The notes under the pieces are model-generated. The model was not told the origin of the DNA, ran no database searches, and saw only the letters and a program-made list of their open reading frames with translations. Shown here piece after piece: positions 1,625-48,985 of a DNA stretch of 64,000 nt. A program made the position numbers and the translations under genes. Each line of letters starts with the position of its first letter. Position 1 is the first letter of the stretch. Source of the stretch: Anthoceros angustus (lineage: Eukaryota; Plantae; Anthocerotophyta); contig VJWM01000134.1 of NCBI GenBank assembly GCA_010909165.1, positions 558,001-622,000 of the forward strand. Direction: 5' to 3'.

Positions 1625-2776
1625 TTAGGCGGCCATGGGAGTAGGTAATCTCCGCTCCATCCCCTCAACCCCGAGCTGCGGGACCATCTCCGTGAGCAGC
1701 TTCCTGGCCGTCTGCGTGCCGAGGTCGATGCTGGACTCCACATTGCTGGCAATGTCGAACACGATGCTCTCGAGCATGGCGGAGTCCGGTCTCTGCGACT
1801 TCTGGCGGCTCTGGTCCCGCAGCAGCTGCAGCAGAGTGCGCGCCTTCTGCTGCCCTGTCTGCGTGCCCTGCACTGTGAGCTCCAGCAGGCCCGGGATCAC
1901 TCCCTCTCCCAAGATGGCGTCCCTGTACCGCTCCCGGCTGCTCTGGCACATGGAGAGCAGGATGCTCACGGCCCGCTCCCGGCTGGCCAGCGAGCCGTCC
2001 TCCAGAACCTCCACCAGGGCAAGAATCCCGCCCTCCTCCTTCCCGATGGCGTCGATCCCCTTCTCGAACGCGGCCAAACCCTCGAGCAGGGCCGTGCACC
2101 TCTCCGCCACCTTGGACGACTTCTTGCTCTCCTGCAGCAGCGTGACGAGCGGCCCGACTGGCTTGCACACCAGAATGCGCGTCAGATTCTCCGCGTCCGT
2201 GGACAGATTGTAGAGCGCCATGAGCGCATCCACCTTGGCCTGCATACTAGACGAATCCAACATATCCACCAGCAAGGCCGTGGCCCCGGACGCCCCGATC
2301 ACCGGCTTGTTCGGCGGCGCGGCAGAGAGCGTCAAAATCGTAGCAGCCGCAGCCTCCCGCAGCGTCTCGTGGCTCGATCTCAGCAGCTCCACCAGCGGAT
2401 CCACAGCCCCGGCGGTCACAATCTTTACCTTATTCCGCTCATTCCCGACCGAAAGGTTGAGCAACGCCAGCACGGCCGCCTCCTTGGCGTCGTTGCTGTT
2501 CCCCGGCTTGAGCATCGCCACAAGCGGCACAATCACTCCCGCAGCCGCCAGATACGCTCTGCTCTTGGCCGACGTCTTGGTGAGCTTCCGAATTTGCAAG
2601 GCCGCGCGCGTCCGCTCCTCCCCCTCCCCGCACTGCAGCGTCCACAGCAGATCCTGCATGCTCTGCTTGATGGCGTTCCGCGCGCTCTCGTAGATAGCCG
2701 ACTCGTTCCCGAGCCGCTCCAGCTCCTGCTCCACCTGGTCCCGAAACTCCGCCATCTCCTCCGCCTCCCCGCTCAT
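1625..2776 (-). CDS. Armadillo-repeat protein (PUB-like ARM array, no U-box seen), single exon, 383 aa
   Basis: Repeated ARM consensus segments (AGVIVPLVAML...EAAVLALLNLS; AGAVDPLVELL...AAATILTLS; EGVIPGLLEL...KARTLLQLL). Confidence 0.9.
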   Translation of the reverse strand: MSGEAEEMAEFRDQVEQELERLGNESAIYESARNAIKQSMQDLLWTLQCGEGEERTRAALQIRKLTKTSAKSRAYLAAAGVIVPLVAMLKPGNSNDAKEAAVLALLNLSVGNERNKVKIVTAGAVDPLVELLRSSHETLREAAAATILTLSAAPPNKPVIGASGATALLVDMLDSSSMQAKVDALMALYNLSTDAENLTRILVCKPVGPLVTLLQESKKSSKVAERCTALLEGLAAFEKGIDAIGKEEGGILALVEVLEDGSLASRERAVSILLSMCQSSRERYRDAILGEGVIPGLLELTVQGTQTGQQKARTLLQLLRDQSRQKSQRPDSAMLESIVFDIASNVESSIDLGTQTARKLLTEMVPQLGVEGMERRLPTPMAA

Positions 2777-4379: not shown

Positions 4380-5030
4380 TCACAGACCTTTGTGGCACAT
4401 AGCCTGCAGCAGCCATCTGGGCCTCGCGCGACTGGCTTTCGCACCCATCCAGACCTTTGTGGCGAGTAGCTTGAGGAGCCATCCGGCCTCGCGACATCGG
4501 CTGCAGCCATCCAGCCTTTGAGGCGATAACTGCAGGAGCTATCCAGCCTCGCGATCGCTTTGGCAGCCATCCGAGCCTCAGCGATTGCCTTTGGCAGCCA
4601 TCCAGGCCTCGCGGCGCCTTTGGCGTGTGCCTCGCGATTGCCTTTGGCGGCCGTCCGAGCCTCGCGCGATTGCCTTTGGCGGCCGTCCGAGCCTCGGCGC
4701 GCTTTGGAGGAGCCATCCGGGCCTCGCGACACTGGCTTTCGCAGCCATCCAGGCCTTTGTGGCAGATAGCTTGGAGGAGCCATCCAGGCCTCGCGGCGCT
4801 TTGGCAGCCATCCGCCTTTGTGGCAGATAGCCGGAGGAGCTATCCAGCCTCGCGATTGCCTTTGGCGACCATCCGAGCCTCAGCGATTGCATTCGGTAGC
4901 CATAAAGGCCTCGCGGCGCTTTGGCAGCCATCCAGCCTCGCGATTGCCTTTGGCAGCCATCCAGCCTCGGCGCCTTTGGCAGCCATCCAGCCTCGCGATT
5001 GCATTTGGCAGCCGTACAGGCCTCGTGCCA
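4380..5030. repeat. GC-rich minisatellite, ~27-30 bp units (GCCTTTGGCAGCCATCCAGCCTCGCGATT and variants)
   Basis: Tandem imperfect units are directly visible. Confidence 0.9.
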
Positions 5031-7907
5031 ACCATGAATGATATATATGTACATGTGTGGTGTAGGTAAACCCTAAACATGAGTATGTGTGTTTGACAAA
5101 AACCCTAAATGGCAGAAAGAAAAGTAGATGATTTGTGGCGTCTACAGCCCGTCGTGCGCTGATGTGGCCCGTATGTGATGAAGGAATCTTGAAGATGCCT
5201 ACGCATCTTCATGTAGAGTACTGGAGAAATAAAACTTGTCACACAGACCCTTCTCCTTGACGAGATCGGTATTCCATACTTCAGTTTTATGCTTTATGAT
5301 TTAAAGAAAAATATGTTTTATCATTATGGTTTTTTATTATTGTACTAATAATTTCTTTAATAAAGTAGATTGAAGACAATGGATTGAAAAACAAGACGAC
5401 CCGGTGAGCTCCTAGTGAGATGTTCCTCTCACCTACCGGGACTCTAAAGCGTTTGAAGCATGCAGCGTAGGAGTGTTTTGTGGGTCGATTTTCTATAGGT
5501 ATCTACAAGATCGAGTGGGGGATTTGAGTACGAAATTTGTATTTGGGTATGATAGGTGTTCGAATGTGGATGCACCGAATCACACAGGAATCGCTTGTAG
5601 CTGGAATGTACCAGCTTGCCATGATGGGGCATGCCAGGCAATGCTGGTAACACGAGGCCGAGGACACCGGATTTGGCAGTTTCGGTTTGGAGTCCTGCAA
5701 TCTCGCGGAGGGAGAGGGGGATGTGAGTGGGAGCAGCTGCGACAGGGGCAGCGCGGAGGGCGAGCCGGGGCAGGGCGTGATGGTGTGCGGGACATGCAGA
5801 ACAACATGGCAGCTTTTAATGGCAGCCACTCCTGCTGCTGCACTTGGCCGGAGCAAGGGTAGGGAAGACGGACGCGGGTCCCAGCCCCAGGGCGTGGAGC
5901 GGAGCGGCGCACAGAAGGGCGGAGCGGAGCGTCCAGGGCGTTCCGCTGCGGCCGCGTGGTGGCCTCCACGGCCGCTTTTCACCCCGTGGTAAAAAGCTTT
6001 CTCACCCACTTTCACCCCGCCCGGCAAGAGATATTTGCGTGCAGGGTCCGGCCCGAAACGGGCCTCCGCTTCGCCTTTGCCTTCGGAATTGGAGCTGGTG
6101 ATGGGAGGAGTTTGGTGGTTCCCTTCCCCGTTACGACGTTGGGGAGATGCGGGTGGCGGCGAGGAGGTGGTGTGGGGCTGGGAGGGGACGAAGTTTCCAA
6201 TCGAGTGACATTGTATGGAGGGAAGGAGGGTTTGGGAGCCATCCAGCCTTTGTGGCGAGATAGCTTGAGGAGCCATCCAGCCTCGCGATTGCCTTTGGCA
6301 GCCATCCAGCCTTTGTGGCGAGATAGCTTGAGGAGCCATCCAGCCTCGCGCGCCTTTGGCAGCCATCCAGCCTCGCGATTGCATTCGGTAGCCATAAAGG
6401 CCTCGCGGCGCTTTGGCAGCCATCCAGCCTCGCGATTGCCTTTGGCAGCCATCCAGCCTCGCGATTGCCTTTGGCAGCCATCCAGCCTTTGTGGCGAGTA
6501 GCTTGAGGAGCCATCCGGGCCTCGCGATTGCCTTTGGCAGCCATCCAGCCTTTGTGGCGAGATAGCTTGAGGAGCCATCCGGGCCTCGCGCGGCGCTTTT
6601 ATCCAGCCTTTGTGGCAGATAGCCTGGAGGAGCTATCCAGGCCTCGCGCGACTGCCTTTGGCAGCCATCCAGGCCTCGCGCGATTGCATTCGGTAGCCAT
6701 AAAGGCCTCGCGCGACTGCCTTTGGCAGCCATCCAGGCCTCGCGCGACTGCCTTTGGCAGCCATCCAGGCCTCGCGCGACTGCCTTTGGCAGCCGTCCAG
6801 GCCTCGCGCGATTGCATTTGGCAGCCGTACAGGCCTCGTGCCAACCATGAATGATATATATGTACATGTGTGGTGTAGGTAAACCCTAAACATGAGTATG
6901 TGTGTTTGACAAAAACCCTAAATGGCAGAAAGAAAAGTAGATGATTTGTGGCGTCTACAGCCCGTCGTGCGCTGATGTGGCCCGTATGTGATGAAGGAAT
7001 CTTGAAGATGCCTACGCATCTTCATGTAAGATCTTGGAGAAATAAAACTTGTCACAGACCCTTCTCCTTGACGAGATCGGTATTCCATACTTCAGTTTTA
7101 TGCTTTATGATTTAAAGAAAAATATGTTTTATCATTATGGTTTTTTATTATTGTACTAATAATTTCTTTAATAAAGTAGATTGAAGACAATGGATTGAAA
7201 AACAAGACGACCCGGTGAGCTCCTAGTGAGATGTTCCCTCTCACCTACCGGGACTCTAAAGCGTTTGAAGCATGCAGCGTAGGAGTGTTTTGTGGGTCGA
7301 TTTTCTATAGGTATCTACAAGATCGAGTGGGGGGATTTGAGTACGAAATTTGTATTTGGGTATGATAGGTGTTCGAATGTGGATGCACCGAATCACACAG
7401 GAATCGCTTGTAGCTGGAATGTACCAGCTTGCCATGATGGGGCATGCCAGGCAATGCTGGTAACACGAGGCCGAGGACACCGGATTTGGCAGTTTCGGTT
7501 TGGAGTCCTGCAATCTCGCGGGAGGGGAGAGGGGGGATGTGAGTGGGAGCAGCTGCCATGTGTGCGCTGTGATGCAGCTGTTTGCAGAATACGACGGTGG
7601 GCCTCGTGGGCTGTTTAGCAGCCGTGTATCTGGTGTTGGGGGCTGATTGGGCGAATTACTGGGGGTGCTGCATCACATTTGTGGGCTTACATCGATTGCA
7701 TGGCTGCTACAGCCCCGGCCCCTGTTCCCCGCGGCTGGGATGGAGGTATCGGAATTGGAGCTGGTGATGGGAGGAGTTTGGTGGTTCCCTTCCCCGTTAC
7801 GACGTTGGGGAGATGCGGGTGGCGGCGAGGAGGTGGTGTGGGGCTGGGAGGGGGACGAAGTTTCCAATCGAGTGACATTGTATGGAGGGAAGGAGGGTTT
7901 GGGAGCC
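4995..7907. repeat. Mosaic local duplication: ~4995-5740 = ~6808-7556; 5732-6091 = 3100-3471; 6083-6240 = 7749-7907
   Basis: Near-identical blocks by direct comparison, differing mostly by 1-2 nt indels. Confidence 0.85.
6235..6835. repeat. Second array of the same minisatellite
   Basis: Same unit as 4380-5030. Confidence 0.9.
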
Positions 7908-15879: not shown

Positions 15880-17271
15880 CTAGAAGGGGCTCACTGTCCG
15901 GGCCAGCTGAATGCAAAACTCCGGCACGAGACGTCTGTCGCCTTTGTGGTGCGTTTCGTCCATGGCTTGACTGGCGTTCACTATCTCCAACAGGGCGACT
16001 AAGAGTTCGTCCGTCCCGCCTCGCATCCAGTCCTGGACGATCATGTCGGTGTGGCCCTTCTCAGGGAAGACCGTGATGGTCACCTGGCATGCCGAGGATC
16101 GGAGCGCGTTCGCGAAGGACGTGCTGGAGTGGGAAGGAACGGTAATATCAGCACCTCCATGAAAGAGGTGGACGGGCGGGAGGTAGGAGAGGGCCGGCTG
16201 GAAGCTAGGTTCTCGCACCGTGCAATCGGGGGAGAAGAGGGGGAAGGATGCCTGGCCCTCCATCAATTTGGACAACACAGTTTGATGCAGGCCTCGGGAA
16301 TGGAAGTGGTCTGCTAGTAGAGGGAGGTTGTAAACGCCGGAGATACCGATGAAAGCCGAGATCTGAGACGCCTTCCAGCCGGAAGAAGAATCAGATGCAG
16401 CCTCCCGCTCAGCCTGCCTGACCAGCGCGCAGGAAGCAAGATGCGCGCCCGCTGACTGCCCTACGATGTACACCTCCTCGGCATCGCCTCCGTACAAGTG
16501 CGCAGTCTGGAAGACGAAGGAAATGGCCCTGGAGACGTCGTCCACCATCTGGCTGATGGTGGCCTTGGGGAAGTTGCGGTAATCCACGCTGGCCACAAGA
16601 ATATCCCTCTCCGAGAGCTTTCTTGCGAACAGCGCGCCCCAGGCCTTGTTCCCGATCATCCAAGCCCCACCTGCGACGAAGATCACCACCGGGCTTGCCC
16701 TAGGGGATGCCTTCGGAAGGTAGAAGTCCAGAATGTTGCGAGGCAGGTCGCCGTAGACGATGTTCCGGCGGATGGAATTGGAAGAGAAGTAGTACCATCC
16801 GACCTGCAGGTGTCCGGGGAGCAGTAGCATCGCGTACAGACCAAGAGCCGCGAACTTGATCAGCACCTTGGCGCTCCATCGCAGCCAGTGCTGCAGACCA
16901 AATCTAGGTTGCTGCTCCGGCTCCTGCTCAGAGAAGGGATGCTGTTGTAACAAGGAGAAGGTTCCTCCTCCGATGGCGATGGTAGTGGCCTCCTCTCCTC
17001 TGCTTTCACTTAGCAATGGCTGATTGATGGAAGCCAGCTGAGCGTGGATTTGCTGGACTCCTGGCGGAGCAACAAAGATGGCTCCTTCTTCCGCCATAGC
17101 GTCCTTCTTCTCCGATCCATGTCCTGCCGCGGGGGTAAGTATGATAGGCTGAACATTGAGAAGATCCGGCGGCAATGTTATGTCAATCACATGCGCAGGC
17201 GATGGTGCAACAAGTGACATCCCTGCTTCGGCCGCTGCAGAGTTTCTTCTGCCCCTGGATGCTGGAAGCAT
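15880..17271 (-). CDS. ICME: Isoprenylcysteine methylesterase (ICME)-like alpha/beta hydrolase, single exon
   Basis: RRNIVYGDLPRNILDFYLP, VIFVAGGAWMIG, VDYRNFP, nucleophile motif GQSAG, HGGADITVP, GHTD. Confidence 0.85.
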   Translation of the reverse strand: MLPASRGRRNSAAAEAGMSLVAPSPAHVIDITLPPDLLNVQPIILTPAAGHGSEKKDAMAEEGAIFVAPPGVQQIHAQLASINQPLLSESRGEEATTIAIGGGTFSLLQQHPFSEQEPEQQPRFGLQHWLRWSAKVLIKFAALGLYAMLLLPGHLQVGWYYFSSNSIRRNIVYGDLPRNILDFYLPKASPRASPVVIFVAGGAWMIGNKAWGALFARKLSERDILVASVDYRNFPKATISQMVDDVSRAISFVFQTAHLYGGDAEEVYIVGQSAGAHLASCALVRQAEREAASDSSSGWKASQISAFIGISGVYNLPLLADHFHSRGLHQTVLSKLMEGQASFPLFSPDCTVREPSFQPALSYLPPVHLFHGGADITVPSHSSTSFANALRSSACQVTITVFPEKGHTDMIVQDWMRGGTDELLVALLEIVNASQAMDETHHKGDRRLVPEFCIQLARTVSPF

Positions 17272-17525: not shown

Positions 17526-20500
17526 TCACAGCTCTCTCCAGTGCGACGAACCATTGATGACCCGAGGGGACGGGCCGTTCATCAGTTTCCTCTTCCTATA
17601 CCTCCACGCAACTTGGATACATTGTGCAGCCCAGCTTCTCCAGTAAGGTGAAGCGTATCTGCAGCATAAGGGCCAGGAGGTGGGCATTTCATCAATCCTG
17701 AACAGAAAGCATTTGACGTCGTGGGAGCTAGAATGACACATGGGCTAGTACCTGATTGCACCCTGAACACGGGGGCTTCGCATATCTCGGCTGTAGCTCT
17801 TCACGAGCTTCTCCAAATCGGCAACTTCGATTGTGAAGGCTTCAACATTGGTGACGCACCTGACTTGCCTGCTTGACACTGCATGTTGACCCATTCGTCT
17901 TGTGGGGATGACCTTCCGTGGAGCCGAGGATTCATTGCTCGCCACTTTATCCATACAGGGTTCAGTATGATGGACTCCGGTTTGGCGTTTAGGAGGCAAG
18001 GCTGCTATTCCACCACAAAGTGATGCGACGTACCAGATGGTTGTTGTAAGTTCTGCTCCAGACACCAGACCAGTAGTTCCTCTCCACAGAAGTTCCCTTC
18101 GTTAAGAGGCACGCCGTCGCCGTAATCTCCACAGCTTACTAGAGTACCACGAACGATGAAGATCATACGCTCAAGGGGGAGGTTGACCCGCATGATATCG
18201 CTCCCGGCAATGTACACCTTCGGCTTCAGAAGCTCACAGATGGCATCCAGCACATGCTCCTCCATATGCTTGAAGATCCCAACCTGCATGGTGTCCACCA
18301 CAGGCATCCTGTCACAAATGCTTCCAAGTATGCAGAGAGAAGGGACAAGAGACAACCACGAACCTTTTTCACAAGATCAAAGCATAGAAACCGTCGAATT
18401 TCTTTGTGCAGATCTTCAGGCAGGCTATCCAGAAACTCTTCCTCATCGACACCACGGGTAGAAGCCCACTTCAGTCGTTCTGCCTGTCTTACCTTCCTGT
18501 GACGAAGCCACTCACACCCAGTGTCATTCCATCTACATCTTAGCAGCATTCCAGAGTTCCCAGAGCTCTTCAGCAACAAAAGAAAGTGAACAGACAACAT
18601 GTTGTGTAAGTTGAGCTTTCATGCCTGCGCATATTTATAGGCAGCTTCCTGCGTGCCATCCATCCCTCTGCATCGTGCCTCCGAAGCTGCATCTCCAACT
18701 TCCTGTTGCATATATGAGCTTCTGTTTACCGGAGGGCCACACTACAGATCCACAAGAATCCACCAGCACAGGAATGCACAAGTCACAGATGGATGTAACG
18801 AGACCTTCTGCTGAGTGACTGCAGGAAGTTTTGCATGTTTCCAATAAGCAACGCGAACAGGAAAAGACCCAAGGCTGTAACGCCCAACACAAACACTACT
18901 TCCCCGACAAAAAGACTTGGAACTTGGTTTCCTGCCAAAGTGCTGATTTGCTGCATCCAAAGACGTGGGCTATGAGTCAACGCGAGAACTGCTTTTGCTG
19001 TAAAAGAAGGAGTGCAGCCATGGTTGTAGACCGGACCTGGAAGCCCCAAAAAAGTGCATATATATACTTTGTCCAAGATTGACTTAGTGTCACCACAGGG
19101 ACTGCAGTTTGGTAGATGCCATAATCGAAGCTGGTTATGTTGGCATTGAAACAATCTCCTGTGCTGGTGTTTTTTAACCACTCCTGTCGAAGAGGATTGT
19201 CAAGGCCCCGCTTACCATAGCCACAATCAAGATAGTCAGTGAGACAGGTGCTATTTTCTGCAAAGCACTGCTCATGCAGGCACTGGTTCACTCGCTGCAC
19301 ATGGAGCACAAGAACATATCAGAAGTCCCCCACCAGGGGGCACCTCGACTTGCAACTCAGAAAGCAGATATAGTGATGTGCTTTAACACTAGATATGGTT
19401 CCGAGATTGCTGATACCTGAAGGCCAAAGAGGTACCAAGTGGACCCAACAAGATGCCCAGCAAGAAGATACATGAGGAGGTTGATAACAAAGTTAGCCCA
19501 AGCAGTTTCAAAGATGAATCCTCCGGCAGTTTCCCCTGATAGAAGTGGCAGAAACCGGATCATTCTGGGGAAATACTGAACGAGAACTGTAATTCGGATG
19601 ACATTTTTGAAATAGTCTGCTTTTCCCAAGTAAATGGGCACCACAAACCAGATGATAATCTGGACAACAGATTTCAGTGGGGTGTAAGTCAGCTAAGCAA
19701 CACAGCATATACGGAACACAGCATATTCCGTGTCCTTGTTCTGAATCACAAAGCTTATACAGACCTGAGGTAAAGGCAAAACTGCGATGACATCGATCAG
19801 AAACCAGCCACTTAGATAGTTACGTGCAATCTTCTTGGGATCATCCACCAGTTCTCCAGCTCCGATTTCTCGTGATTCCACATACGCCACCCTGAACTGC
19901 AACCCAGAGGTTCTGTTTGAGAACTGAGCTGCATGTGGCCCGATGTTGCTGATATCTTTGCTGCCACGCTCTCTCAAGAATGAGCAATGGTGATCAGGGA
20001 AACAACTAGTCTAGCCTGCGGCATTTACCTTCCTCAGAATTGCATACTATTACAAACCTGAAGGAGCATGTGACCAAAGTAGAACAAATCTGTCACGGTT
20101 CTGAATACTGTAACTGCCAGTGCAAAATTTCTGTCGGTGTAAATGCACTTGTTCTTCTGTGGCATGTCAAAGGATATGCTCTCATTGGAATCTGTCAACA
20201 TTCTCACCCGTGCGCCAGCCAGATCAGTGGAAAGAGATGAGCACATTACCTCGTTTGCAGCGAGTAAGAAGAAGAAAAGAGGATCAACAAATATAGCCAC
20301 AAGGCAAGATATAACGAAAAACTTGTTCCACCACTGTATGATCTTTGTGTGAGGGTTCAGGATGCCAGGAACGAAGAAGAGAAGATTCCCCATACACTTG
20401 CTGCGAAAGTCTTTAGCCCCCCTCATGAAGGCACTTCTCACTTGCTAAAACTCGGAGACATGTCGCAAGAAGCACCACAGTTAATGGGCTTGCATGCTGT

Positions 20501-20819
20501 GCAACCCGACAAACAATCCCTGAAACACATAACTGCACATGAGCAGGCATACCAGGTGACGATCTGAGAAAGTTTTGCTTTTCGTCTCCTTGGAATGGAA
20601 ATAGGAGGGACATGTTGTGCAAAAGGGGTCGTTGCATCTTCCCAGGGGTCCCGACTTCAAAAGATGTCCGTGCTGCTCAAAAGGATCAAGTTCCACCTTT
20701 CTCTTTCTCTCCACCGGAATATCGATGGACACCTGGGACAGCTCCAAGGACGAGTCAAGGTTGCCTGACAACATCGGGAGGTCGTCGAAGTCAGGCGTGT
20801 CACTGTGCAACCGTTCCAT
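17526..20819 (-). CDS. CNGC: Cyclic nucleotide-gated channel, CNGC19/20 (group IV-A) type, multi-exon
   Basis: SGPLGRCNDPFCTTCP, WNKFFVISCLVAIFVDPLFF, pore ISTLAGNQVPS (AGN filter), CNBD GNFCGEELLVW and NVEAF, IQ motif IQVAWRYRK. The start codon is uncertain. Confidence 0.9.
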
Positions 20820-22200
20820 CCTCCTGGACCTGCTTCTGGTGTAGTCCTGCGTTACGGCAACTTCGAGCTTAAGTATCAGAGGGAGCAACATCCAGGCACC
20901 CCATGAACCCAGTCATCCCGTAGCACAGAGATTCACAAACTCCGGCAGCCAGGCCCTGCCTGTCACAACTCCATGACAGAACCTTCAACGTGAGACAGCC
21001 AGCAGGGCCTCAGACTACTCACCACCGCAGGCATCATATCAGCTCTGTTGAGCAACCCCCTTCAATCTCTCTCTCCGCAACCAGCCTAGAATGAGTTCTC
21101 CCAGCTGCGTCACCTTGCATCACTCGAACCAATGTCGCGGTCTGCAAAAGCTCGGAATTTCAACACGGTCCGCCTCCCTTCCCCTACACATCCATCAGAT
21201 TTGCCGGAGCTCCCATCGCTGAGCTCACATGGGAGCCACTGGAGCACGGACAGAATCCCAAATTCCAGCGTTACGACACTATACCCACAATCCCAGCAGG
21301 GCAGCGGCTGCTCCGAGCCGCTGAACAGCAAATGCGGCAAAACCCACCTCAGCAAATGCAACAAACAGCGGCTTTTACACGCAGCGACCCTGAACAGACG
21401 CCTTATCCAATTCGTCACACAACCCACCAAAACACACACATACACATGCAGGATCAGACCAATGCAGACGCCAACTCGGGGAATGCCATGCGATGCAATG
21501 AAATGCAAACCAAGCCAGACAGAATCAACGAGCCCCCAGCACAAGGCATGACGCGAGCAGACGAGCGGGGCCGGGCGCACCCGATTCCCGGCACTCGGTC
21601 GGGAGGTGCCGCGAAATTGAGAAGGACACAGTGGCCATTTCCAATGGTACCCAGACGATGCTTTGCGCTGCAACGCATTCTCTCTCTCCTCTTTCTCTCT
21701 CTATCTCAGGTTCCGAGTCCGACTCCTGTCTTTGGCTTGAAGTTGACGCGATATAGACTGACCTGGTCCTTGCAAACCGCCAGGACGCCCAGACAGACAC
21801 CCGGACACGGAACACGCCAGAAAATATCCACAACACAAGAAATGTTTTCTGGATCACTCCCCTCCCTTCGATTTTCGACTCCCAAAACCCACCGTAAAGC
21901 CCTAAACCCAGAGCCCTAGTGGAGGGTTTTGCATCTGCCCAGCCCTAAGCACCCACAACCCGAGGGTTTTGCGAGCCGATGCTGCAGCTGGAGATCGAGA
22001 ATGCGGGGGATGATGGATGCCTGAGCTTGGGCTGGATGGTGCAAGGGCTTGATGCGGGAGATCAGTGCATGCAGGGAATGTAGGTAGATGTGAACTCGAA
22101 ATTGGCAGGTCCTTGAGGAACGCTGAGGTGTGTGGAGGGGAATTCTGTGCTTCCTGCAGCAGGCAAGGCGGAGGAGGAGTGGCAGGGTTTAGGAGGCAGG

Positions 22201-23614
22201 ATGACAGGGGCGTTGGTGAGGGCAGGCAGTTTGATCCGGAAGGTTTTGGTGGCGCCGTCGGCGGGTGGCGGGAATGTGTGCAAGTCGGAGGGCCTGGGGC
22301 TCGGATGGGGCCAGCGGGGCCAGCTGCATTTGTTGTTCAGCTCCTCTGCTGCCAGCGAGGAATTGGCCGGGGTGTCGGATGAGGCAGGGAGTCCGAGTTC
22401 GCGGGAGGTTGGAGGTGGTTCGGGAAGTGGCACTGATGCAGCACCTGCAAATACGTACGTGATTCCGGATAGATCGAAGCTAGTTGCGACGGAGCCTTAT
22501 AGAGTCTCTCCGTTCACGGAAGTGGAGTATCCGACGTTCACTAAGGAGCCGTATAGTGGGAAACCGGCTTCTGGTATGTGTGTGTGAGTATTGGTTGCTA
22601 CGTTTTGATGGGAATAAAGATCTGCTTCTTGCGTTTGGGCATTGATGGACGTGGTTTCTGACAATCAGACAAAACGGAAAGTTTATGGAAGGTCTTCTTC
22701 TCCGATCCGAACAAGTGGTGGGACAACAGAAACAGGAAGGTATGGCTCTTAATGAAATCTTGCTGACCAGTGGAGCCTGCGTGATTTCATTTGCTTTTGC
22801 ACCTCGAGTGGCTGTTCGTGTGGCTTTTAAGCACAAGAAGTCTTTGCGGTTGTGTTTCCAGCGGTATCCAGACGATCCAGATTTTCAAAAGAAAGGAACG
22901 AAGGAGCCTCTATGGATTGACCACCAGACCACTCCTGCTTGGGTGAAGCCTGAGCTTGAAGCCCTTGCGAAGCGAAGAGAACTGGAAAGGAGACCTACCC
23001 ACGGTTATGGATCTCACAATTATTCTTCAGAACCGGCAGGGGATGATGCTTCAGAAGAACAGAAAGCAGAGGGAGGGTCAGACGCAGAGAAGAGTTCCGC
23101 TGGAACTTTGAACCTGTCCTTGGACTCTAAAAGGGACCAAACACCGGAAAGCAGCCCTGAAGCCATCAAGAGGGTGAACAATGCACTGGACGAGATTATG
23201 GCCCGCATAAAAGAAAAGGAAAGGAAGGCTGCAGAGGCCAAGGCAGCCGGGATAGATGAGTCGGCAAGTGAAGGCGGCTCCACAACTAACGCTATTGCAC
23301 CTCGAAACAGGAAGGTCGAGGGCTATGTGAGGAGGTATCCTCGACACAACAAGAAAGCCATTCTTGAGCAGGAATCTGAGGAGGGGGAGTCCACGGCTGA
23401 GTATCACAGCGAGAAGCTGGCCATTGCCTTCGGACTCCTCAAAACCCCACCAGGCACAACCATCCGCATCTTCAAGAATCTCAGGGTGTGCATTGATTGC
23501 CATGAGTTCACCAAAGCCGTGACCAGGGTTACAGGAAGGGAGATCATCGCCAGAGATGCCAACCGCTTCCATCATTTCAAGGACGGCAAGTGCTCCTGTA
23601 ACGACTACTGGTAG
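22201..23614 (+). CDS. PPR-less PDF-motif/DYW deaminase fusion protein, paralog 1; exons 22201-22573, 22669-22739, 22862-23614
   Basis: Spliced [19 protein letters not shown]|[20 protein letters not shown]...PAWV (OSB PDF motif). C-terminus HSEKLA...[10 protein letters not shown]...[16 protein letters not shown]. Canonical in-phase splice sites. Confidence 0.85.
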
Positions 23615-24257
23615 CCTGGGCAACCCCTGGGCCCTGGCTGTGCGTCGTCAACAAGTCCTGGAAGCCTCTCTTAAATGCAAGGGCAGGGCGGTGCTGAAGT
23701 GATCTCAATCCGTGAATCTCGGTAGTGAAGGTGAGACGGAGCTGTCATTTTGTTAGAGCCTCAACAGCTGTGGAAAACGTAGGACAAGGGCGAGGTATGT
23801 GGTAGTGCCAGTCAGCAGTCACTGCTCCTCAACCACTGCTCACGATGTGGAATCCAGGAATCGGGAAGGTGTATTCGATAGTGCCAGTCAACAGTCACTG
23901 CCTCCCAACCATTCTGGAATGGAGGAGTCGAAGAAAGGAGACGGACTAAGCCGCTCATGGCTGACCTTTGATCATCGTCATGCCCGAACCATTCTGGAAT
24001 GAGGAATAGATAACTGTGGAGGGACTAACTTCTCACCGGTAATCTTCACAAATGCATCGTAATTGCCTGCTTAGCGAAGTAAATCGTTCGCAGCCCTGAA
24101 GTTGCGAGCGCTGAATAATATTTCACGGACGTCTACATATTATGTTTAGCATATTATGTTTAGCAGACTATGTAGTCACACGCGTGGCGAGTCTAGCGAC
24201 TCTCGTGAAGACGTCAAGCCACTGCCACTTGTCTCTGGTGTCACGCCAAGAGAGCTC

Positions 24258-25100
24258 TCAGCCTTGCACTTCAATTTCCTGCAAGCTTTCCTCTAGCTTT
24301 GCCACCGCATGCTCTTGATGCAGCTTGGTGAGCGCGGCGAGGAAGCCTTCCCGGTCATAATGGATTTGAAGCTCCTCAATCACGAGATCCTTGTTCACAC
24401 GGGCCAGGCAGTGGCCGATAATCTCGACCATCTCTCCATGCGCAGGGCATCCTTTGAAGGGCCCGGCCATGCGCCCGAAGTGGCGCCAGGTGAAGGAGAC
24501 GGTGGGAGGCGGCGAAAACACCTCCAACACCTCAAACGCGAAGCCTTCAGAAAAGGCGAGCTTGAACGCGTCGTTAGCCGACTCGAACGTCTCGCTACTC
24601 CCCTTGTAGTGGCGCATGCAGTCTCCCAGCAGCATGTTGTACGGTCCAATCTCCGCCATGGTGGCCGCGTCCACAGGCCCGGCCCCGTTGGAGAAGGCCT
24701 GGAACCGCGCTACGTCCATCGTCCTCCACCGACTCGCCTCCCCGATGTGATGCGACTCCACCTGCACCGCACCGAAATCCATCACATGCATCAGCACCGG
24801 ATTCCATCACACACTAACGACTCTACCAGCAAGCGCAACGCATCATGAACCAGATCAACCTCTTCCGACATCACGAACCTCCCAATTCTTCACCAGCTTT
24901 TGCACTACGGCCTCCAGCGAGCCCGCCGGATGCTCCTTCATCCTGTGCGCGAAATACGCCTTGTTCACCGTGGCGTAATCCGGCAGCCCGAACCTCCATG
25001 GCGTGTCCGCCTCCGGCTCATAGTCCCGGATGATCTCCTCCAGCCTCCCCTTGCTCTCCCGGGTCAGGCTTCCCATGGGGCCCCCGTGCTCAAGCGCCAT
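24258..25100 (-). CDS. Pathogen-related protein family (probable NTF2/SnoaL-like fold); exons 25100-24879, 24761-24258
   Basis: WRFGLPDYATVN, GSLEAVVQKLVKNWE|VESHH, GPYNMLL, ETFESA...F...GFAFEVLEVFSPPPTVSFTWRHFG. Confidence 0.85.
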
Positions 25101-25718
25101 GACACTCCCTCCGATCGTGAGCTCAGAATTAAACCTCCTTGCTTCTGAAACCCGCTCCGATCGTGAGGCCTAGACAGACATTCCCTCTTGAAAGACCGTC
25201 CGTCTCGGAGCGAGCGCCGGGGCCTGAATTCAGGCCGAGCCTTCTACACATTTCTTGTACGTACACAGAGACGACCGCCCCGACCGATTAGGATGGGCTA
25301 TGTCATACCCAATCGGACGGACGAGATAAACCCTCAGCCCTCTCCCCACATGGCGTGGATGTCCCGCGACCGTGCGATGGGCCTCGTCTTGGAGGCTCTC
25401 TCCCGCCATGGGAAGGGAGTAGACTAGGTCAAGGCAAGCTCGCCGACCCGACGTTTTTTCAAGCCAATAAAAAACGAAAACTGGACTGAAAACACGGGCA
25501 GTTCAGGAGATGTTATGTCATGCCGTTCAGTTCCTTGATGAGGAGTTGCCGGGAGGCGGTCGAAATATCTCTCCGATATGGGATATTTCAGATGTAATGG
25601 GGCTGGGAACCTAATGGGATCGGGAGGTAACCCTATTAGGTGATGAGAAATGTGTGACCCTGTGACGACGCTGGACAAAGCTGCGGGACCTTGGCGGCTG
25701 GCTCGACAGTCTCTCCGC

Positions 25719-27348
25719 ATGGATGCCGTGTTGAAGCCGGCCGTGCTCTGCGTGCCGAGCGCGGAGCTATGGCGGAAATGCGTGAAGAGCTGCGCCGCGG
25801 TGTCGCACCATTCCGCGCAGGCGGCGAAGCAGGGCGCGAGGTGGCTGCCCGTTGAGAAAGGCAGCTGCGGGGTGAGGCGGGGAGGATTGCTGCTCGGGAG
25901 AGTGCAGAATTACTCCACGGCGGAGGCGGCGCTTGACACCGGGAATGCGGGTAGGTTTTGCAGCTGGCCGAGCTAGGTTTTGTTTGCGCTTGTGGATTTG
26001 CGTGCTTGCATTGCATGCTGGGATGCAGGCGCGGTATGAAGGGTTGCGTTTTCCAGATGTGGAGACTCCGAAGCTAGGGCAGGAGCCGGGTCAGGTGAAG
26101 CCTCCTGGTATGTGTGGTTTTATGTGGTTTCGTGATTGTGCGAGGGTGGGACAATGTGGTGAAGGGGTTAAGGGGTTCCTGGATTGCAGAGAGCAAGGCG
26201 GAGAGCCTGTGGAGGGTGTTTTTCAATGATCCGAGCCGGTGGTGGGACGACAGGAGTAAGAAGGTGCGTGGCTTGTGAAACCCTTGGCCGGGACTGGTGG
26301 GGGATTCGGTGGTTTGGGTGTCGTTTTGGTGTGCTGAGAGGAGGGAGGGGTTTTGTGTTGTGGTTTGCAGCGGTCACCGCAGGATCCGGATTTTCAGAAG
26401 AAGGGAACGAAGGAGCCGCTGTGGATTGACCATCCCTCCACTCCGGCTTGGGTGAAAGGGGAGCTGGAAGCTTGGCAACAGAAAAGGGATCAGGAAAGGA
26501 GACCGCCAAATCGTGGCTATGGTGCGGGCGGGCCTGGTGGACCGCCGGGGACTGGGAACGTCTTGGGAAGGAACTTAGTAGGTAATGGGAACATCTTGGG
26601 GAGGAACATGGGGGGGGTAGATAGAGAGAAACTTTTTGGGAAGAACTTTGCGGAGAGGAAAGCGGAGGGCTTCGAGAAGAGAGCGGACGGCTTCGAGAAG
26701 AAAGCGGAGGTCGTCGAGAAGAAAGCGGAGGACGATGAGGAGGAAGACGACGAGTGGATAGATGACGGGGATGACCTCATGGCCCGGTTGAGAAGGAAAG
26801 AGAAGCAGGCGGTGAAAGAGAAGACGGCGGATAAGGGTGGATCTGTGAATCATACTTTGGACCCCGACCATAAGTCGGATTTGGAAGAGGCGGTGGATGC
26901 CTTGGAAAATGAGGTGCAGGACCTTAGGAAACGGCAGAGAGAAAAGGAGAGGCAAGAGAAGATCGCGAGAGGAGAGATTGATCCAGACGATGAGAATGAG
27001 AAGGCAGCCAAGGCAGCGGCTCCAATAGCGAGGAACCGGGGGAAGGTTGATGGTTATATGAGGAGGTATCCTCGGCACAGCAGGCAAGCTATGTTGGACG
27101 ATGAAGGAGGGGACGGGGACTACAACCCAGCTGCCTACCACAGTGAGAAACTGGCTATTGCGTATGCGCTCATGAAATCGCCTGAGGGCCATACCATCCG
27201 TATTGTGAAGAACCTGAGGGTATGTATAGATTGCCATGAATTCACCAAGGCTGTTACCCTGGTTACCGGAAGGGAGATCATCGCCAGGGACAACACTCGT
27301 TTTCATCATTTCAAGGACGGGAAGTGCTCCTGCAACGACTATTGGTAG
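25719..27348 (+). CDS. PPR-less PDF-motif/DYW deaminase fusion protein, paralog 2; exons 25719-25950, 26057-26107, 26190-26263, 26371-27348
   Basis: Spliced [19 protein letters not shown]|[20 protein letters not shown]...PAWV. C-terminus HSEKLA...[10 protein letters not shown]...[16 protein letters not shown]. The intron within the PDF motif is at the same position as in paralog 1. Confidence 0.85.
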
Positions 27349-29534: not shown

Positions 29535-31094
29535 CTATCTGTAGTCAAGGTTAGCGAGCTCCTTCTTCAACTTCCTGCTGAAAGGCTGGCAAGCATCCAC
29601 ACTCAAATCCACCGCAGCAGCCAAGGCCATGAACACGGCAGCATCCTCCACAGACGAGGCGTGCTGCATCGCCAGCTGCACCACCGGCTTGCTCCTCTTC
29701 CTCTGTGCCTCCCCCTTCACGCTGCAACTCATGACGAAGCCCCCCGGCGCCTGGAGCCCCAGTGTGACGAAGGAGTAGTCCCCGCTGCTCTTGGGGCTCT
29801 CGTCCGGGGAGCGGGAGCTGCTGGGGGTGGGAGCCTCCGACCTCAACTTGGAGGTGTCGATGACGAACTCCCCCCCGTGCTGCTTGCTGAGAACCGTTCC
29901 GCGATGACGATCCCGTTGCTGAGCCCCGCCACGCCCCACCGTCCCCATGAGCTGGAACCTGCACCTCCCCTTCCCGTTCCGCTCCTCCAGGCCTCCAGCT
30001 GTCCCCACGGCCTCCAACTGTCCACCCCGGCATGTCTGGCCGCAGAATCACCCACGCTCCCGGGTTCGACTTGCTCACCCTGTCCGTCCCCGCCGACGGC
30101 ACGAAGGGCGTCACCATTGACGCTGCCGCCAGAGGAGCTCCCGACAGGTCGTGGATCATCACCAGCCACCCCTTCCTCTCCTTCCGCTCCTTCTCCTTAC
30201 CCCCGTTCAGGGCCGCTGCCCACCCGCTCGGCGTGGATGGATCGTTCTGCCCCAGCCTGGAAACCACAGCACCCCCATCCCTCAGCATAACAAGCGCACG
30301 AAACCCACAAAAACCCAGCAAAGCCAGAGCTGGAGACGAGCAAAGCAAGGGCAGCAAAGCAAACCAAAGCAAGTCCCAGAAAACCCACAAAATCAAGAGC
30401 TGCGGACAACAAAAGCAAAGGCAGCAAAGCAAATCAAAGCAAGGCGAAACAGGGCAGAGCAGAGCAAAGAGAAGGAAAGGAGGAAGAGACTGACCCGGAG
30501 CGGCTGAACTTGCAATTGAAGATGGGCTGCCTGGAGTTCCCCTCAGCCTGGACAATCTTGGGGTTGAGGGAGGCGGCGCCGTCGAACTGGAAGACGTAGC
30601 GGGGATCGGGCTCGACGCGGACGACGAGATGGAGCTCGGCGCCGGGGCGGCCGCCCTGGGCCTTGCCCTTGCCGATGGAGACCCAGCCGGAATGCAATTG
30701 CTGGGGCTTGCCGGCGGCCCAGTCGCGCTCGATGGGGACTCGGAACAGGCCTAGCTGCTTGCCTTGGCTGACGCCGCAGCAGGAGCCCTGGCGGCCCGTG
30801 AACACCACCACCTCCAGGAAGCGGGCGGCGGGCATGCATCGCCCACCAGACAGGAGTTTCTTCAGCGCGGGCTCGTCGAGATGGAAGCTGGCGGCCACAT
30901 TGTGGGCGTCGGGATCTTGGGCTCCGGGCCAGCAACGGCAAGGCGGCCGTCTGCGCGGGAAAATTCGGCAAGCGAACCTCGCAGTAGCAGGGGGAGGATG
31001 CCGAGTGCACTCCCGCGCCCGCAGCCCTGCTCGCCACCGGTATCCTCAGCCCTAGCCCGCCCACGCAGACGCGGATGAACGCCCGCGCCTCCAT
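29535..31094 (-). CDS. DUF1005 family protein, 2 exons, with apparent frameshifts near 30920 and 29985-30030
   Basis: FIRVCVGGLGLRIP, SPCYCEVRL, EPDPRYVFQFDG, RKGWLVMIHDLSGAPLAAASMVTPFVPS, SNPGAW, SWRPWGQLEAWR, EDAAVFMALAAAVDLSVDACQPF. Confidence 0.85.
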
Positions 31095-36677: not shown

Positions 36678-38033
36678 TCAGAAGAGGAACTCCGTTAGAT
36701 GTCTGCTACCAAGGTCCAAACCACTTTCGACAGCGGCAGCGCTGGGACAGTTCATGCGATGCCACTCGAAGTGATCCTCACAGCAGATGGAGTTGCAGAT
36801 GATTTTCAACCCTCTTGCCTTCCAGCTGGCCTTGTACATGTTGTAAGACTTGTCAAAGGCCTTGCTCATACAATAGCTGCATGGGAAGAGCTCCCCTGTG
36901 TCCGTCACTGGACAAGTCCCCTTACAGCACTTGATGAGGCGTTGCAGTTTGTACGAATAATATTGCCTGTGCCACGGGTTTTCAAGAGCATGGCGAGCAA
37001 GATGACCTGCACTGTCACACAAAATGCTGGAGCATTCCAAGCAAAACCCTAGATTTGATGTCTGCGTGCACAAGCAACACTTCGCTGTAAGAGATGCGGC
37101 CCCTATCTCCTTACATCTCTTGTAGAGCTTAGCCAAGTCCCTGCTGCGGGTGTGCCCATCTTCATCCTGCTCTCCTCGACCATTCTGAGCTGTTGGGTGA
37201 GCAGCAAACGGTGTCGGAAGTCCGGCCGCTGATGTGCAATCAACGGCTAAGTGACCAGGTCGCATGCATTTCCAGCATCGGTATGTGGAAAGACTGCTCT
37301 GTATGATGCCCTCCCAATGGTCACCGTTCCCCCTGTTAGCTTCCAGCTCCGGTGGTTGCAAAGCTTCTGCAGGCAAAGTAGGGACCGTGAAAGAGTTTCC
37401 ACTACCTGCCAGACTTTCAACTTCTGCGTCGGCCCGCAGCTGTAGATGCTCATCCTTGCACTCCGCGCTGCAGACATCTTCGTCCGTCTCAGCACAAACA
37501 TACTCACCATACCTTCCACAAACCACACATACAGGCTCTCCAGGACCTGCGAACCGCTGATCTGTCCTCCGCTTCAAGACGCCACTGCTGGTATACCTAT
37601 CCCTCTCTGCCGACTCGTCCCCGTCGGCCTCATCATCTGGCGAGACTCTCCCCCCTACTCCCCCTGGGTCTCTCTCGTTCCCGCCAAAAGCGCAAGCTTC
37701 TCCATCACTTCCTTCAGTTCTGCGCAGTGACCTTGTCTCCTGCACTCTCTTCCTAGCTTGCTCAACATACTCTTCATGCGACACCACTGCGGGAGGTTCG
37801 ACAATCTGTGGGCTGGTGCCCTTGGACTCAAACTTCTGCCTCTTCACACTCCGCTGCGCAACGGATCGCTCCGTTCCGCACGTCACTGCCCTTCCAGATG
37901 CATCCAACCTGGGAATCGATGCAGCTCCGGTTGCGATGTTGTAGCTCTCAAGATTTTCTAGGGTAGAGGTCAGGTCAAATTCCTGTGCGTAGGAGTAGGC
38001 AGTGTTCTTGTAGAAGTTGGTGCGGGTGGCCAT
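36678..38033 (-). CDS. Multi-zinc-finger protein (HIT-type finger resembling the DDX59 N-terminus, CCHC knuckle, further Cys/His clusters), single exon
   Basis: QRFAGPGEPVCVVCGRYGEYVCAETDEDVCSAECK; CWKCMRPGHLAVDC; Cys-rich C-terminal half. Confidence 0.8.
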   Translation of the reverse strand: MATRTNFYKNTAYSYAQEFDLTSTLENLESYNIATGAASIPRLDASGRAVTCGTERSVAQRSVKRQKFESKGTSPQIVEPPAVVSHEEYVEQARKRVQETRSLRRTEGSDGEACAFGGNERDPGGVGGRVSPDDEADGDESAERDRYTSSGVLKRRTDQRFAGPGEPVCVVCGRYGEYVCAETDEDVCSAECKDEHLQLRADAEVESLAGSGNSFTVPTLPAEALQPPELEANRGNGDHWEGIIQSSLSTYRCWKCMRPGHLAVDCTSAAGLPTPFAAHPTAQNGRGEQDEDGHTRSRDLAKLYKRCKEIGAASLTAKCCLCTQTSNLGFCLECSSILCDSAGHLARHALENPWHRQYYSYKLQRLIKCCKGTCPVTDTGELFPCSYCMSKAFDKSYNMYKASWKARGLKIICNSICCEDHFEWHRMNCPSAAAVESGLDLGSRHLTEFLF

Positions 38034-45915: not shown

Positions 45916-47864
45916 TTTTCAAATTCGATCAGATCTCCGTCAGGTAAAGGTGACCGGCGGGCCCGACACCTGCTCACCCTTGTCCTGTAGCGACGCCGGT
46001 GGAAGGTGGTCGGTTGTGAGCGCGGTGCCGCGGCGGCCACCGGCGACCGGCTCGCCACCGGATGTCGCAAGACGGTTGGTGCGGGCCGGCCCTGCTTATC
46101 CGGGCACCCGTCTTGGATGCCACCCACGTCGCCCGATTAGCTCGCTTGCTTCGCGTATTGGTGGCCTTGGCGCTTGCCTCACGGTTACCAAGCTCCGCGG
46201 CTCGTCGTTGCCAACGGCGGACAACGGACATTATCAAATCTCGCCACTTCCCATTGGATATTATTCACCTGCTTTCCCCGCCCCCTTCATGCTTGATTCC
46301 ACTCCCCGCTTGTGCAACTGTGCAACTGTGCGCCTTGCAACGCGGTGCCCGCCGCAACAACCAAGCGCTTTCCCTTTTCTCTTTCTACCTCCCTTCCATG
46401 CTTGCTTGCTTCCGAGTGTTATCTACATTGCGCCAACCGAGATGTAGGCTCTCTACATATAGATATTATTTTTTTTGTTTATATAAATATGAATAAATAT
46501 AAGTTTACAGATATTTTCAAAAAATTATTTAATCTAAATTTTTTTATGACCGAGGTCAATACAATTATATACACGTTTTCCAATGTACGAAGCCAAATGC
46601 CCACTAGTCTTTTCATTCACTTATTGAGATAAGAGAGAACGGGAAGTTGAGGAGAGTATGGTATTGAAGAGAAATGGAGAAAGAGTTAGTCGTCTCCATA
46701 GTAATTGTTAATGAAAGGTTAGTCGAAGGTCTATTACTTGTAGAGTATCTACAAAGTCTAGAATGGTGTTAGAGACCTAGTCCAAGAACAAAAGGTTAAT
46801 CAAAGGTCTATTTTAATACTTGTGGCTTAGGGGTTCATTCGTGGAGGCTAGGCCCCTGGCTCTTGACGCTTTAGTGGGTTGTCCCCTCGAATAGATAGAT
46901 TTTCCCTTCTCTTCGTTTCAATAAAGTCTTCATTGTTCCTTTTAATACTTGTGCAGTGTCTAGAATAGTATTAGAGACCCGGTCTAATACATATATGCTA
47001 AAATTTAAAATCATTTTAATAGTCTTCAACTCTAACATTTGGGCACTAAAATCTTTTGATGTGCTTCAATATCATATAATTTGTACGTATATGCCTGTTT
47101 TGTTTTCACTCCCACCTACTACTAGACTAGGCCTGTTTCCTTTGTATTCCGGAGGTGGGACTGGTCTTCATTTGTAGCAATGTATGGGGGTGTGGACGAA
47201 GGGAAGGAGACGGAAGTACGAAGTATCAACGTGGAGAAGTAGGAAAAAGTAAAATGTAGGAACGATTTTTGCTAGGGTTTATGATTATTACGCATTTATT
47301 TCACTAATTACTGTGACGTTAACGCGGGCGCGGCAAAGAGGAGGGAGGACTAAAAGAAAGGATGACGAGGGTGTTAGGAGTAAGGCGACTAGACTAGTCT
47401 AGACTAGCGTAGAGGAGAAGCCGGAGGAGGTGACAGCGTCGGAGGCAGTGTCGGAGGCGAGCCGGGAGTGGCGTGGGTTGGCGCTGGCGCTGGAGCAGTG
47501 CTTGGAATCGAGGCAGCGGGCGGCGGAGGCCGCAGCCGCACCGGGAGCGGGAGCGGGAGCGGCGCTACCTCCTCCGGTGGCGCCAGCACAAGGGGGAGCA
47601 GGAGCGGGAGGGGCAGGAGGAGGAGGGGGAATAGCTGCCGCGGCAGCCGCAGCAGGGGAGGAGGACGGTGGCGAGGCAGCTGCAGCTGCAGCTGCAGCAG
47701 GTGCCCCCTCCGCGCTTGCGCTTTCGCTTGCTGCCGACTTGGCTCCGTCCCAGCTGCTGGCCCCTCCCGCCACCACTGTGGGACACGACAATGTGCTCTT
47801 GCAACAGCAGTTGCAGCAGCAGCAGCAGCAGCAACAGCATCAGCATCAGCTGGGAGGGGCAGCG

Positions 47865-48954: not shown

Positions 48955-48985
<31 letters not shown>

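What the first reader, a model, noticed from the sequence alone, without database searches (positions are those of the whole stretch)
22201..27348. Two genes fusing an OSB-type PDF ssDNA-binding motif to a DYW deaminase, with no PPR repeats
Seen: the ORF track hides this because introns split the module. Spliced, both genes read LW(K/R)VFFxDPxxWWD(N/D)RxxK|[28 protein letters not shown], then a charged linker, then a DYW core with HSE, CxxC, HHF and CSC...DYW all intact. No 35-aa helical PPR or E motifs are visible. Established: LWxxFFxNPxxWWDNRxxKxNPxxPDFKHKxTGEALW...PxWV is the PDF motif of plant organellar ssDNA-binding OSB proteins, where it mediates ssDNA binding. DYW domains are the Zn-dependent cytidine deaminases of organellar RNA editing and are normally guided by PPR arrays or recruited in trans (Arabidopsis DYW1). 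Inference: this could be an organelle-targeted deaminase steered by a single-stranded nucleic-acid-binding module. It might act on ssDNA (AID/APOBEC-like), be a nucleoid-tethered trans-acting editing enzyme, or link editing to DNA replication and recombination. I do not know this architecture from the literature, but could not search.
Basis: partly seen in the sequence, partly recalled or inferred. Interest (0 to 1): 0.95.

Follow-up and report, generated by a model that had tools for sequence, protein, structure and literature searches.

The report
Hornwort editing enzyme without RNA reader

Summary
The fusion is real. G1 (398 aa) and G2 (444 aa) are spliced at five GT..AG introns, all seen in transcript contigs that carry both modules; three related organisms have matching transcripts. 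The N-terminal motif is a true OSB-type PDF domain; no PPR or E motif is present. All catalytic, zinc and PPR-docking residues are kept; the model best matches DYW1 (Z 15). Homologs in other hornworts, including Nothoceros, keep both modules around unrelated linkers of about 130-800 aa; I found none outside hornworts. PDF also heads PPR proteins in ferns and lycophytes, so it does not by itself imply a DNA substrate. Best reading (~0.55): a hornwort-specific, independently evolved trans-acting C-to-U deaminase completed by E+ PPR partners, with PDF as a tether. An ssDNA deaminase is not excluded (~0.1). The scan noted the same architecture elsewhere in this genome (s1-270528) and many PDF-PPR fusions. 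I found no paper on it. No function is shown.

The parts
22201..22573 (+). G1 exon 1: ATG, putative organellar (mitochondrial-like) targeting peptide, and unconserved spacer
   Evidence: targeting inferred from composition
22669..22739 (+). G1 exon 2: 5' half of the PDF domain (LWxxFFxDPxxWWDNR)
   Evidence: joints; 30.5 bits against the OSB PDF HMM
22862..23614 (+). G1 exon 3: 3' half of PDF, charged linker, truncated DYW, stop
22862..22960 (+). G1 PDF 3' half (PDF...PLW...PAWV)
23159..23212 (+). G1 amphipathic helix equivalent to DYW gating helix alpha1, followed by a ~30-aa low-confidence insertion
   Evidence: alignment; AF2 helix at pLDDT above 90, aligned to DYW1
23330..23347 (+). G1 family motif RRYPRH, replacing the canonical GYxPD gating segment
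23402..23611 (+). G1 DYW deaminase core: HSE, KNLR, CIDCH, HHF, CSCNDYW
25719..25950 (+). G2 exon 1: putative mitochondrial-like presequence; an in-frame upstream ATG at 25650 could add 23 aa
26057..26107 (+). G2 exon 2 (51 nt spacer)
   Evidence: joints
26190..26263 (+). G2 exon 3: 5' half of the PDF domain
   Evidence: 27.2 bits
26371..27348 (+). G2 exon 4: 3' half of PDF, Gly-rich and charged linker (with a 21-nt repeat at 26653-26731), truncated DYW, stop
26371..26469 (+). G2 PDF 3' half
   Evidence: 33.1 bits
27061..27078 (+). G2 family motif RRYPRH
27136..27345 (+). G2 DYW deaminase core

Best explanation
G1 and G2 are old paralogs of a small hornwort family of organellar, PPR-less DYW proteins that supply C-to-U deaminase activity in trans. 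Shown: one mRNA encodes leader + one PDF domain + variable low-complexity linker + a DYW domain that lacks the PG box but keeps all zinc, catalytic and PPR-interface residues. Inferred: after import into the organelle, the DYW core docks on an RNA-bound E+-type PPR protein. That partner's E2 motif and PG box complete the substrate pocket, as CRR4 does for DYW1, and the target C is deaminated. The PDF domain, on a long flexible linker, is a sequence-independent tether to single-stranded nucleic acid (nascent RNA or nucleoid) or to the editing complex; it does not choose sites. The family probably arose from a PDF-PPR-E-DYW gene by loss of the PPR/E/PG block (weakly supported), independently of angiosperm DYW2.
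For: PG box absent in all 5 members, present in 118 of 183 non-DYW2 comparators by a crude pattern, and absent in 46 of 47 DYW2-like donors. The AF2 model's best structural match is DYW1, 7w86: Z 15.0, rmsd 2.4 A, 112 of 117 residues. H542/S543/E544/L567/C570/C573 and interface R568/R591/R595/F596/H598 equivalents are invariant (residues from PMC13324415). DYW1 lacks the PG box and is completed by CRR4 (PMC13041630, PMC11897456). E+ PPRs, the natural clients, are 'exclusively enriched in hornworts' (PMC13386178). Purifying selection acts on both modules: G1 vs G2 pN 0.09-0.16 against pS 0.58-1.0, while the linker is unalignable across the family. PDF also heads fern and lycophyte PPR proteins.
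Against: No interaction, localisation or activity data exist. The interface residues are near-invariant in all DYW domains, so their presence is weak evidence. The gating segment is more altered than in DYW1/DYW2, which keep GYVPD-type sequence: an insertion after alpha1, H in the D872 position and A for L889. In OTP86, changes to this region reduce editing. Alpha1 seems retained, whereas E+ partners are thought to supply the gating N-terminus for DYW2, so the fit with a partner is not guaranteed. The role of PDF is unknown.
Confidence: 0.55

Rival explanations
1. A non-catalytic or weakly catalytic adaptor. The zinc-bound DYW fold is kept as a docking or regulatory module (for example a competitor or scaffold in editosomes, or a link between nucleoids and RNA processing), and little or no editing depends on its active site.
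For: Loss of the PG box plus family-wide changes at L889 and D872, residues tied to activity or activation in OTP86. A sister paralog (L002/P0136) keeps leader + PDF but has lost the DYW entirely, so PDF proteins of this clan can work without a deaminase.
Against: The catalytic Glu, the base-stacking Leu and the K915 equivalent are invariant across members with saturated synonymous sites. A pseudo-enzyme would be expected to let them drift.
Confidence: 0.2
2. One reading: a self-sufficient deaminase aimed by PDF at organellar ssDNA (AID/APOBEC-like) or at ssRNA without a PPR partner. The new basic RRYPRH segment would replace the gating finger and PG box and help hold the substrate.
For: PDF alone is sufficient for ssDNA binding in OSB1 (PMC6963530). 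The gating region, which blocks the active site in the ground state (PMC7611903), is rebuilt with an invariant basic motif. Distant fold relatives include bacterial cytidine-deaminase toxins (9c63, Z 6.3; 9k3e DddB, Z 6.1).
Against: The PG box is needed to complete the pocket. PDF is common on PPR proteins, so it does not point to DNA. The PRH region is unstructured in the model (pLDDT below 60). I found no paper reporting DNA deamination by a plant DYW. An unguided mutator in organelles would be costly (inference).
Confidence: 0.12
3. A trans donor that works mainly through its tether: PDF anchors it to nucleoids or R-loops, so that editing is co-transcriptional or coupled to replication and recombination. 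Or it serves deaminase-less WW- or KP-lineage PPRs rather than PG-type E+ proteins.
For: The PDF is as strongly conserved as the DYW core. Unchecked scan notes report many deaminase-less WW- and PG-type PPRs in this genome.
Against: There is no direct evidence. The active site is the C-to-U type (HSE...DYW), not KP.
Confidence: 0.13

Closest known systems
Arabidopsis DYW1 (PPR-less DYW recruited by CRR4) and DYW2/MEF8-type atypical donors
   Same: No E motifs; N-terminally truncated DYW lacking the PG box; intact HxE/CxxC and second zinc site; best structural match of the model.
   Different: Carries a PDF domain on a long variable linker; gating segment replaced by an insertion plus R(R/K)(Y/F)PRH; the core forms its own clade (100/96) apart from DYW2-like sequences (DYW1 itself was not in the tree); found only in hornworts.
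OSB1-4 organellar ssDNA-binding proteins
   Same: One full PDF motif (69 bits for P0290; model TM 0.88 to an SSB-family cluster) and the same phase-0 intron inside the motif as a flowering-plant OSB gene.
   Different: No OB fold; PDF is N-terminal and single; it is fused to a deaminase.
PDF-bearing PLS-PPR(-E/DYW) proteins of ferns, lycophytes and hornworts (apparently undescribed; e.g. Adiantum KAI5076972.1, Diphasiastrum KAJ7295315.1)
   Same: N-terminal PDF after the leader; the Diphasiastrum gene has the same intron in PDF; Atlas clusters named DYW-domain proteins contain the PDF fold.
   Different: The whole PPR, E and PG block is absent and replaced by low-complexity sequence.
RRM-DYW fusion reported in hornworts and angiosperms (PMC13386178)
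   Same: A DYW domain fused to a non-PPR single-strand-binding module.
   Different: The module is an RRM, not PDF; that kingdom-wide survey does not mention OSB.

Membership tests
DYW1/DYW2-type trans-acting DYW donors | No E1/E2 motifs and few or no PPR motifs | tested here: met
DYW1/DYW2-type trans-acting DYW donors | DYW domain truncated at the N-terminus, PG box missing | tested here: met
DYW1/DYW2-type trans-acting DYW donors | Catalytic HxE...CxxC, second zinc site and PPR-interface residues intact | tested here: met
   with residues
DYW1/DYW2-type trans-acting DYW donors | Canonical GYxPD gating segment retained | tested here: not met
   replaced by R(R/K)(Y/F)PRH in 5 of 5 members
DYW1/DYW2-type trans-acting DYW donors | Common descent with angiosperm DYW2 | tested here: not met
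   separate clades in a 70-column tree; comparators are mostly seed plants and the root is arbitrary
DYW1/DYW2-type trans-acting DYW donors | Binds an E/E+ PPR protein and is needed for its editing sites | not testable with these tools
   needs interaction and knockout data
DYW1/DYW2-type trans-acting DYW donors | Organellar targeting | tested here: inconclusive
   basic, Ser/Ala-rich, acid-poor N-termini; no predictor or localisation data
OSB proteins | PDF motif | tested here: met
OSB proteins | N-terminal OB (SSB-like) fold | tested here: not met
   no SSB hit in the exons scanned; an OSB query matches the window only at PDF
OSB proteins | ssDNA binding | not testable with these tools
   needs EMSA; the conserved K/H after PDF are changed to Q/V and K/R
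Canonical PLS-E-DYW editing factors | PLS PPR array, E1/E2 and PG box in cis | tested here: not met
DYW:KP (U-to-C) editors | KP-type N-terminus and variant active site or C-terminal tripeptide | tested here: not met
   canonical HSE and DYW end; compare the KP-type neighbour in L001
AID/APOBEC-type ssDNA deaminases | APOBEC homology or fold match | tested here: not met
   no APOBEC among the listed PDB matches; absence from a list does not exclude it
AID/APOBEC-type ssDNA deaminases | Deaminates ssDNA | not testable with these tools
   needs a biochemical assay

The most novel reading that the evidence does not exclude
A hornwort-specific DYW enzyme that no longer needs a PPR array: the rebuilt RRYPRH gating segment makes it competent on its own, and the PDF domain delivers it to organellar ssDNA or nucleoid-bound RNA. 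It would be the first plant DYW acting on DNA or without PPR guidance, and a possible link between organellar mutation and the extreme editing load of hornworts.
Probability: 0.12. Interest if true: 0.92.

Novelty: new variant of a known kind. Interest (0 to 1): 0.62.

Why it matters
Hornworts have among the heaviest organellar editing in plants and an excess of E+ PPR proteins with no deaminase (PMC13386178), yet I found no report of a trans donor outside flowering plants. This small, expressed, conserved family is a concrete candidate. If confirmed, it shows that split editosomes evolved convergently, and it makes the question testable by a two-gene E. coli assay or a few knockouts. It is also the simplest natural setting in which to ask what the PDF domain does on editing proteins, and whether the gating region can be redesigned, which matters for programmable C-to-U editors.

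Tried and rejected
Mis-splicing or separate transcripts: rejected. Chance motif match: rejected by shuffles and by fold. Pseudogene: rejected (open frames, in-frame indels in relatives, pN far below pS). Degenerate PPR repeats in the linker: none. U-to-C (KP) type: rejected. Membership of the DYW2 clade: not supported. Intron position as a clue to origin: uninformative, since the intron in PDF is shared by an OSB gene and a PDF-PPR gene and absent from others of both kinds. Similarity scores lean slightly to OSB PDFs (sample biased); a FastTree leans weakly to PPR-borne PDFs (support 0.49/0.76); a larger tree run was killed. Blank or uninformative searches: the word search with G1 exon 3 residues 1-165; Atlas by features (only sub-0.9 DYW clusters, then nothing usable); metagenome loci (80 DYW loci, none with PDF or PRH); phages by tblastn; solved structures for the PDF fold (best Z 3.1); Rfam. 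Nine paper searches found no PDF-DYW or PDF-PPR description; Zaegel 2006 and Toma-Fukai 2023 were not held and are cited through reviews. The joined G1/G2 models were used only for the local frame check and a G1-G2 alignment and were never searched or folded.
Full report
Observation. The region holds two paralogous genes on the + strand, G1 (22201-23614, three exons, 398 aa) and G2 (25719-27348, four exons, 444 aa), separated by an unrelated minus-strand SnoaL-like gene. Contigs of run X1 skip exactly the five predicted GT..AG introns and show no mismatch on the listed pieces. One contig per gene carries both the PDF exons and the DYW end. Runs from three related organisms give matching spliced contigs (a few percent nucleotide difference) with coding indels in multiples of three. 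The runs are only guessed to be RNA, but the spliced joints show transcripts; X1 may be the genome's own sample. The organism is a hornwort by inference: the nearest named family member is a Nothoceros aenigmaticus protein. Anthoceros is my guess and was not named by any tool.

The N-terminal module. A profile of the 3' half of the motif retrieved 170 proteins at E up to 0.001. They include OSB proteins with a Pfam SSB domain, fern and lycophyte PPR proteins with the motif at their N-terminus, and proteins made of motif arrays; none of the 150 listed had a DYW domain. An HMM from 60 OSB motifs scores each half-exon at 26-33 bits, against at most 12 for shuffles. The uninterrupted motif of homolog P0290 scores 69 bits. 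It folds as a small confident domain (pLDDT 89) with no solved counterpart (best Z 3.1). In the Atlas it matches an SSB-family cluster (TM 0.88), PPR and 'DYW domain-containing' PPR clusters (0.86, 0.85, 0.80) and two phage clusters (0.71, 0.62). So the motif is a true PDF domain, known to bind ssDNA in OSB1 (PMC6963530), but it is also a common front end of PPR proteins in seedless plants.

The C-terminal module. Pfam finds the DYW core. Every zinc ligand, the catalytic Glu, the base-stacking Leu, the K915 equivalent and the five PPR-interface residues named in PMC13324415 are present in all five family sequences. The domain is not complete, however. The PG box and its strands are missing. 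A helix equivalent to alpha1 is followed by an insertion of roughly 20-35 aa. The canonical GYxPD segment is replaced by R(R/K)(Y/F)PRH, which puts His at or next to the position of OTP86 D872. L889, which is L/V/I in 96% of 230 other DYW domains, is Ala in all five. An AF2 model has a confident helix and core and a low-confidence insertion; its best match is DYW1 (Z 15.0, 112 of 117 residues), ahead of a full PPR-DYW (Z 13.9). That model was built on an alignment rich in ordinary DYW domains, so it is not independent of them.

The family. Two searches covering lengths 179-1638 aa each returned one outlier: P0002 and P0290. P0002 lies in genomic contig L001, where the same WWD exon, the same phase-1 and phase-0 introns and the same PDF exon sit upstream, joined to the DYW by about 800 aa of Ser/Pro/Gly-rich sequence. 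P0290 (609 aa, L086) has an intronless PDF, a different linker and the same C-terminus. A sister gene in the L001 sample (L002) has leader + PDF + 50-aa repeats and no DYW. The DYW cores of G1, G2, P0002 and P0121 form one clade (100/96) apart from DYW2-like sequences, on only 70 columns and with few hornwort comparators. Synonymous sites are near saturation while both modules are conserved (G1 vs G2 pN 0.09-0.16, pS 0.58-1.0). The motif RxxPRH occurs in no other of 234 retrieved DYW proteins nor in 80 metagenome loci. These searches are length-gated and show only top hits, so restriction to hornworts is likely but not proven. The source organisms of L001 and L086 were not named; I take them for hornworts from the Nothoceros cluster mate and from sequence similarity. 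G1/G2 leaders look mitochondrial and the L001/L002 leaders look plastid-like (composition only).

Mechanism. DYW1 lacks PPR motifs and the PG box; its pocket is completed by the E2 motif and PG box of CRR4. E+ PPRs are reported as exclusively enriched in hornworts. A PG-less, catalytically intact, PPR-less DYW in a hornwort therefore fits best as a trans donor for those proteins (0.55). A tether whose linker varies from about 130 to 800 aa cannot position the active site on a base, so PDF more likely raises local concentration on single-stranded nucleic acid or on the complex (inference). Rivals: a non-catalytic adaptor (0.2), a nucleoid-coupled or other-client version of the donor (0.13), and a PPR-independent ssDNA/RNA deaminase (0.12). 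OTP86 mutagenesis shows that the residue before the PG box, L889 and the beta-finger all matter for activity. That argues against stand-alone activity and also leaves room for the adaptor reading.

Origin. Loss of the PPR-E-PG block from a PDF-PPR-DYW gene is the simplest path, since such genes exist. The intron inside PDF is ancestral and shared by OSB and PDF-PPR genes, and motif similarity and trees do not resolve the donor.

Comparison and novelty. It probably works like DYW1/DYW2 but is not a member of the DYW2 clade; it is not an OSB (no OB fold), not a canonical PPR-DYW, and not KP-type. [quoted passage not shown] Subscription papers were not searchable. Earlier notes of this scan report the same PPR-less fusion at another place in this genome with a similar reading (s1-270528) and many PDF-PPR fusions; these are unchecked AI notes and I count only what I retested. 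Verdict: a real, expressed, conserved and apparently undescribed variant of a known kind; interest 0.62.

Noticed in passing
window 24258-25100 (-): SnoaL-like gene (Pfam E 6e-7; resembles plant 'pathogen-related protein' from memory) between G1 and G2, with an intron near 24760-24876, head-to-head with G2 across about 600 bp. X1 also holds a diverged paralog transcript (about 85% identical).
   Followed up: partly
G2 contigs are deeper than G1 contigs in all four runs, but contig depth is a poor measure of expression.
   Followed up: partly
window 25650-25718: An in-frame upstream ATG could extend G2 by 23 aa; it lies inside the transcripts of X2, X15 and X20 but upstream of the X1 contig start.
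   Followed up: partly
L002:1818-3869: Hornwort-type paralog with plastid-like leader and PDF but no DYW. It has four ~50-aa repeats whose core motif (HLxxLxAP) also occurs once upstream of the DYW in P0002 and P0290 but not in G1/G2.
   Followed up: partly
L001:4800-5436 (-); L002:1-125 and 4426-4546: The L001 gene lies tail-to-tail with a DYW:KP-type gene, and L002 is flanked by DYW ends on both sides; the G1/G2 window has no PPR genes at all.
   Followed up: no
P0290:99-163 model: The PDF fold has no solved relative (best Z 3.1) but matches two Uroviricota protein clusters in the Atlas (TM 0.71, 0.62), hinting at a phage link. It also occurs as arrays of up to about ten copies in other eukaryotic proteins (P0122, P0126, P0177).
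   Followed up: partly
window 4411-5025 and 6231-6838: Two blocks of a degenerate ~30-nt satellite; the second lies inside a 454-codon minus-strand ORF (5503-6867) with no Pfam hit.
   Followed up: no
window 18000-20900 (-), 29535-30898 (-), 1625-2776 (-), 15880-17271 (-), 36678-38033 (-): Ordinary neighbours: a channel gene resembling CNGC (by eye), DUF1005, an ARM/U-box-type protein, an alpha/beta hydrolase, and a zinc-finger (HIT/CCHC) protein.
   Followed up: partly
window 47430-49145 (+): Long ORF with a ~96-unit CAG-rich tract (48726-49015) and no Pfam hit.
   Followed up: no
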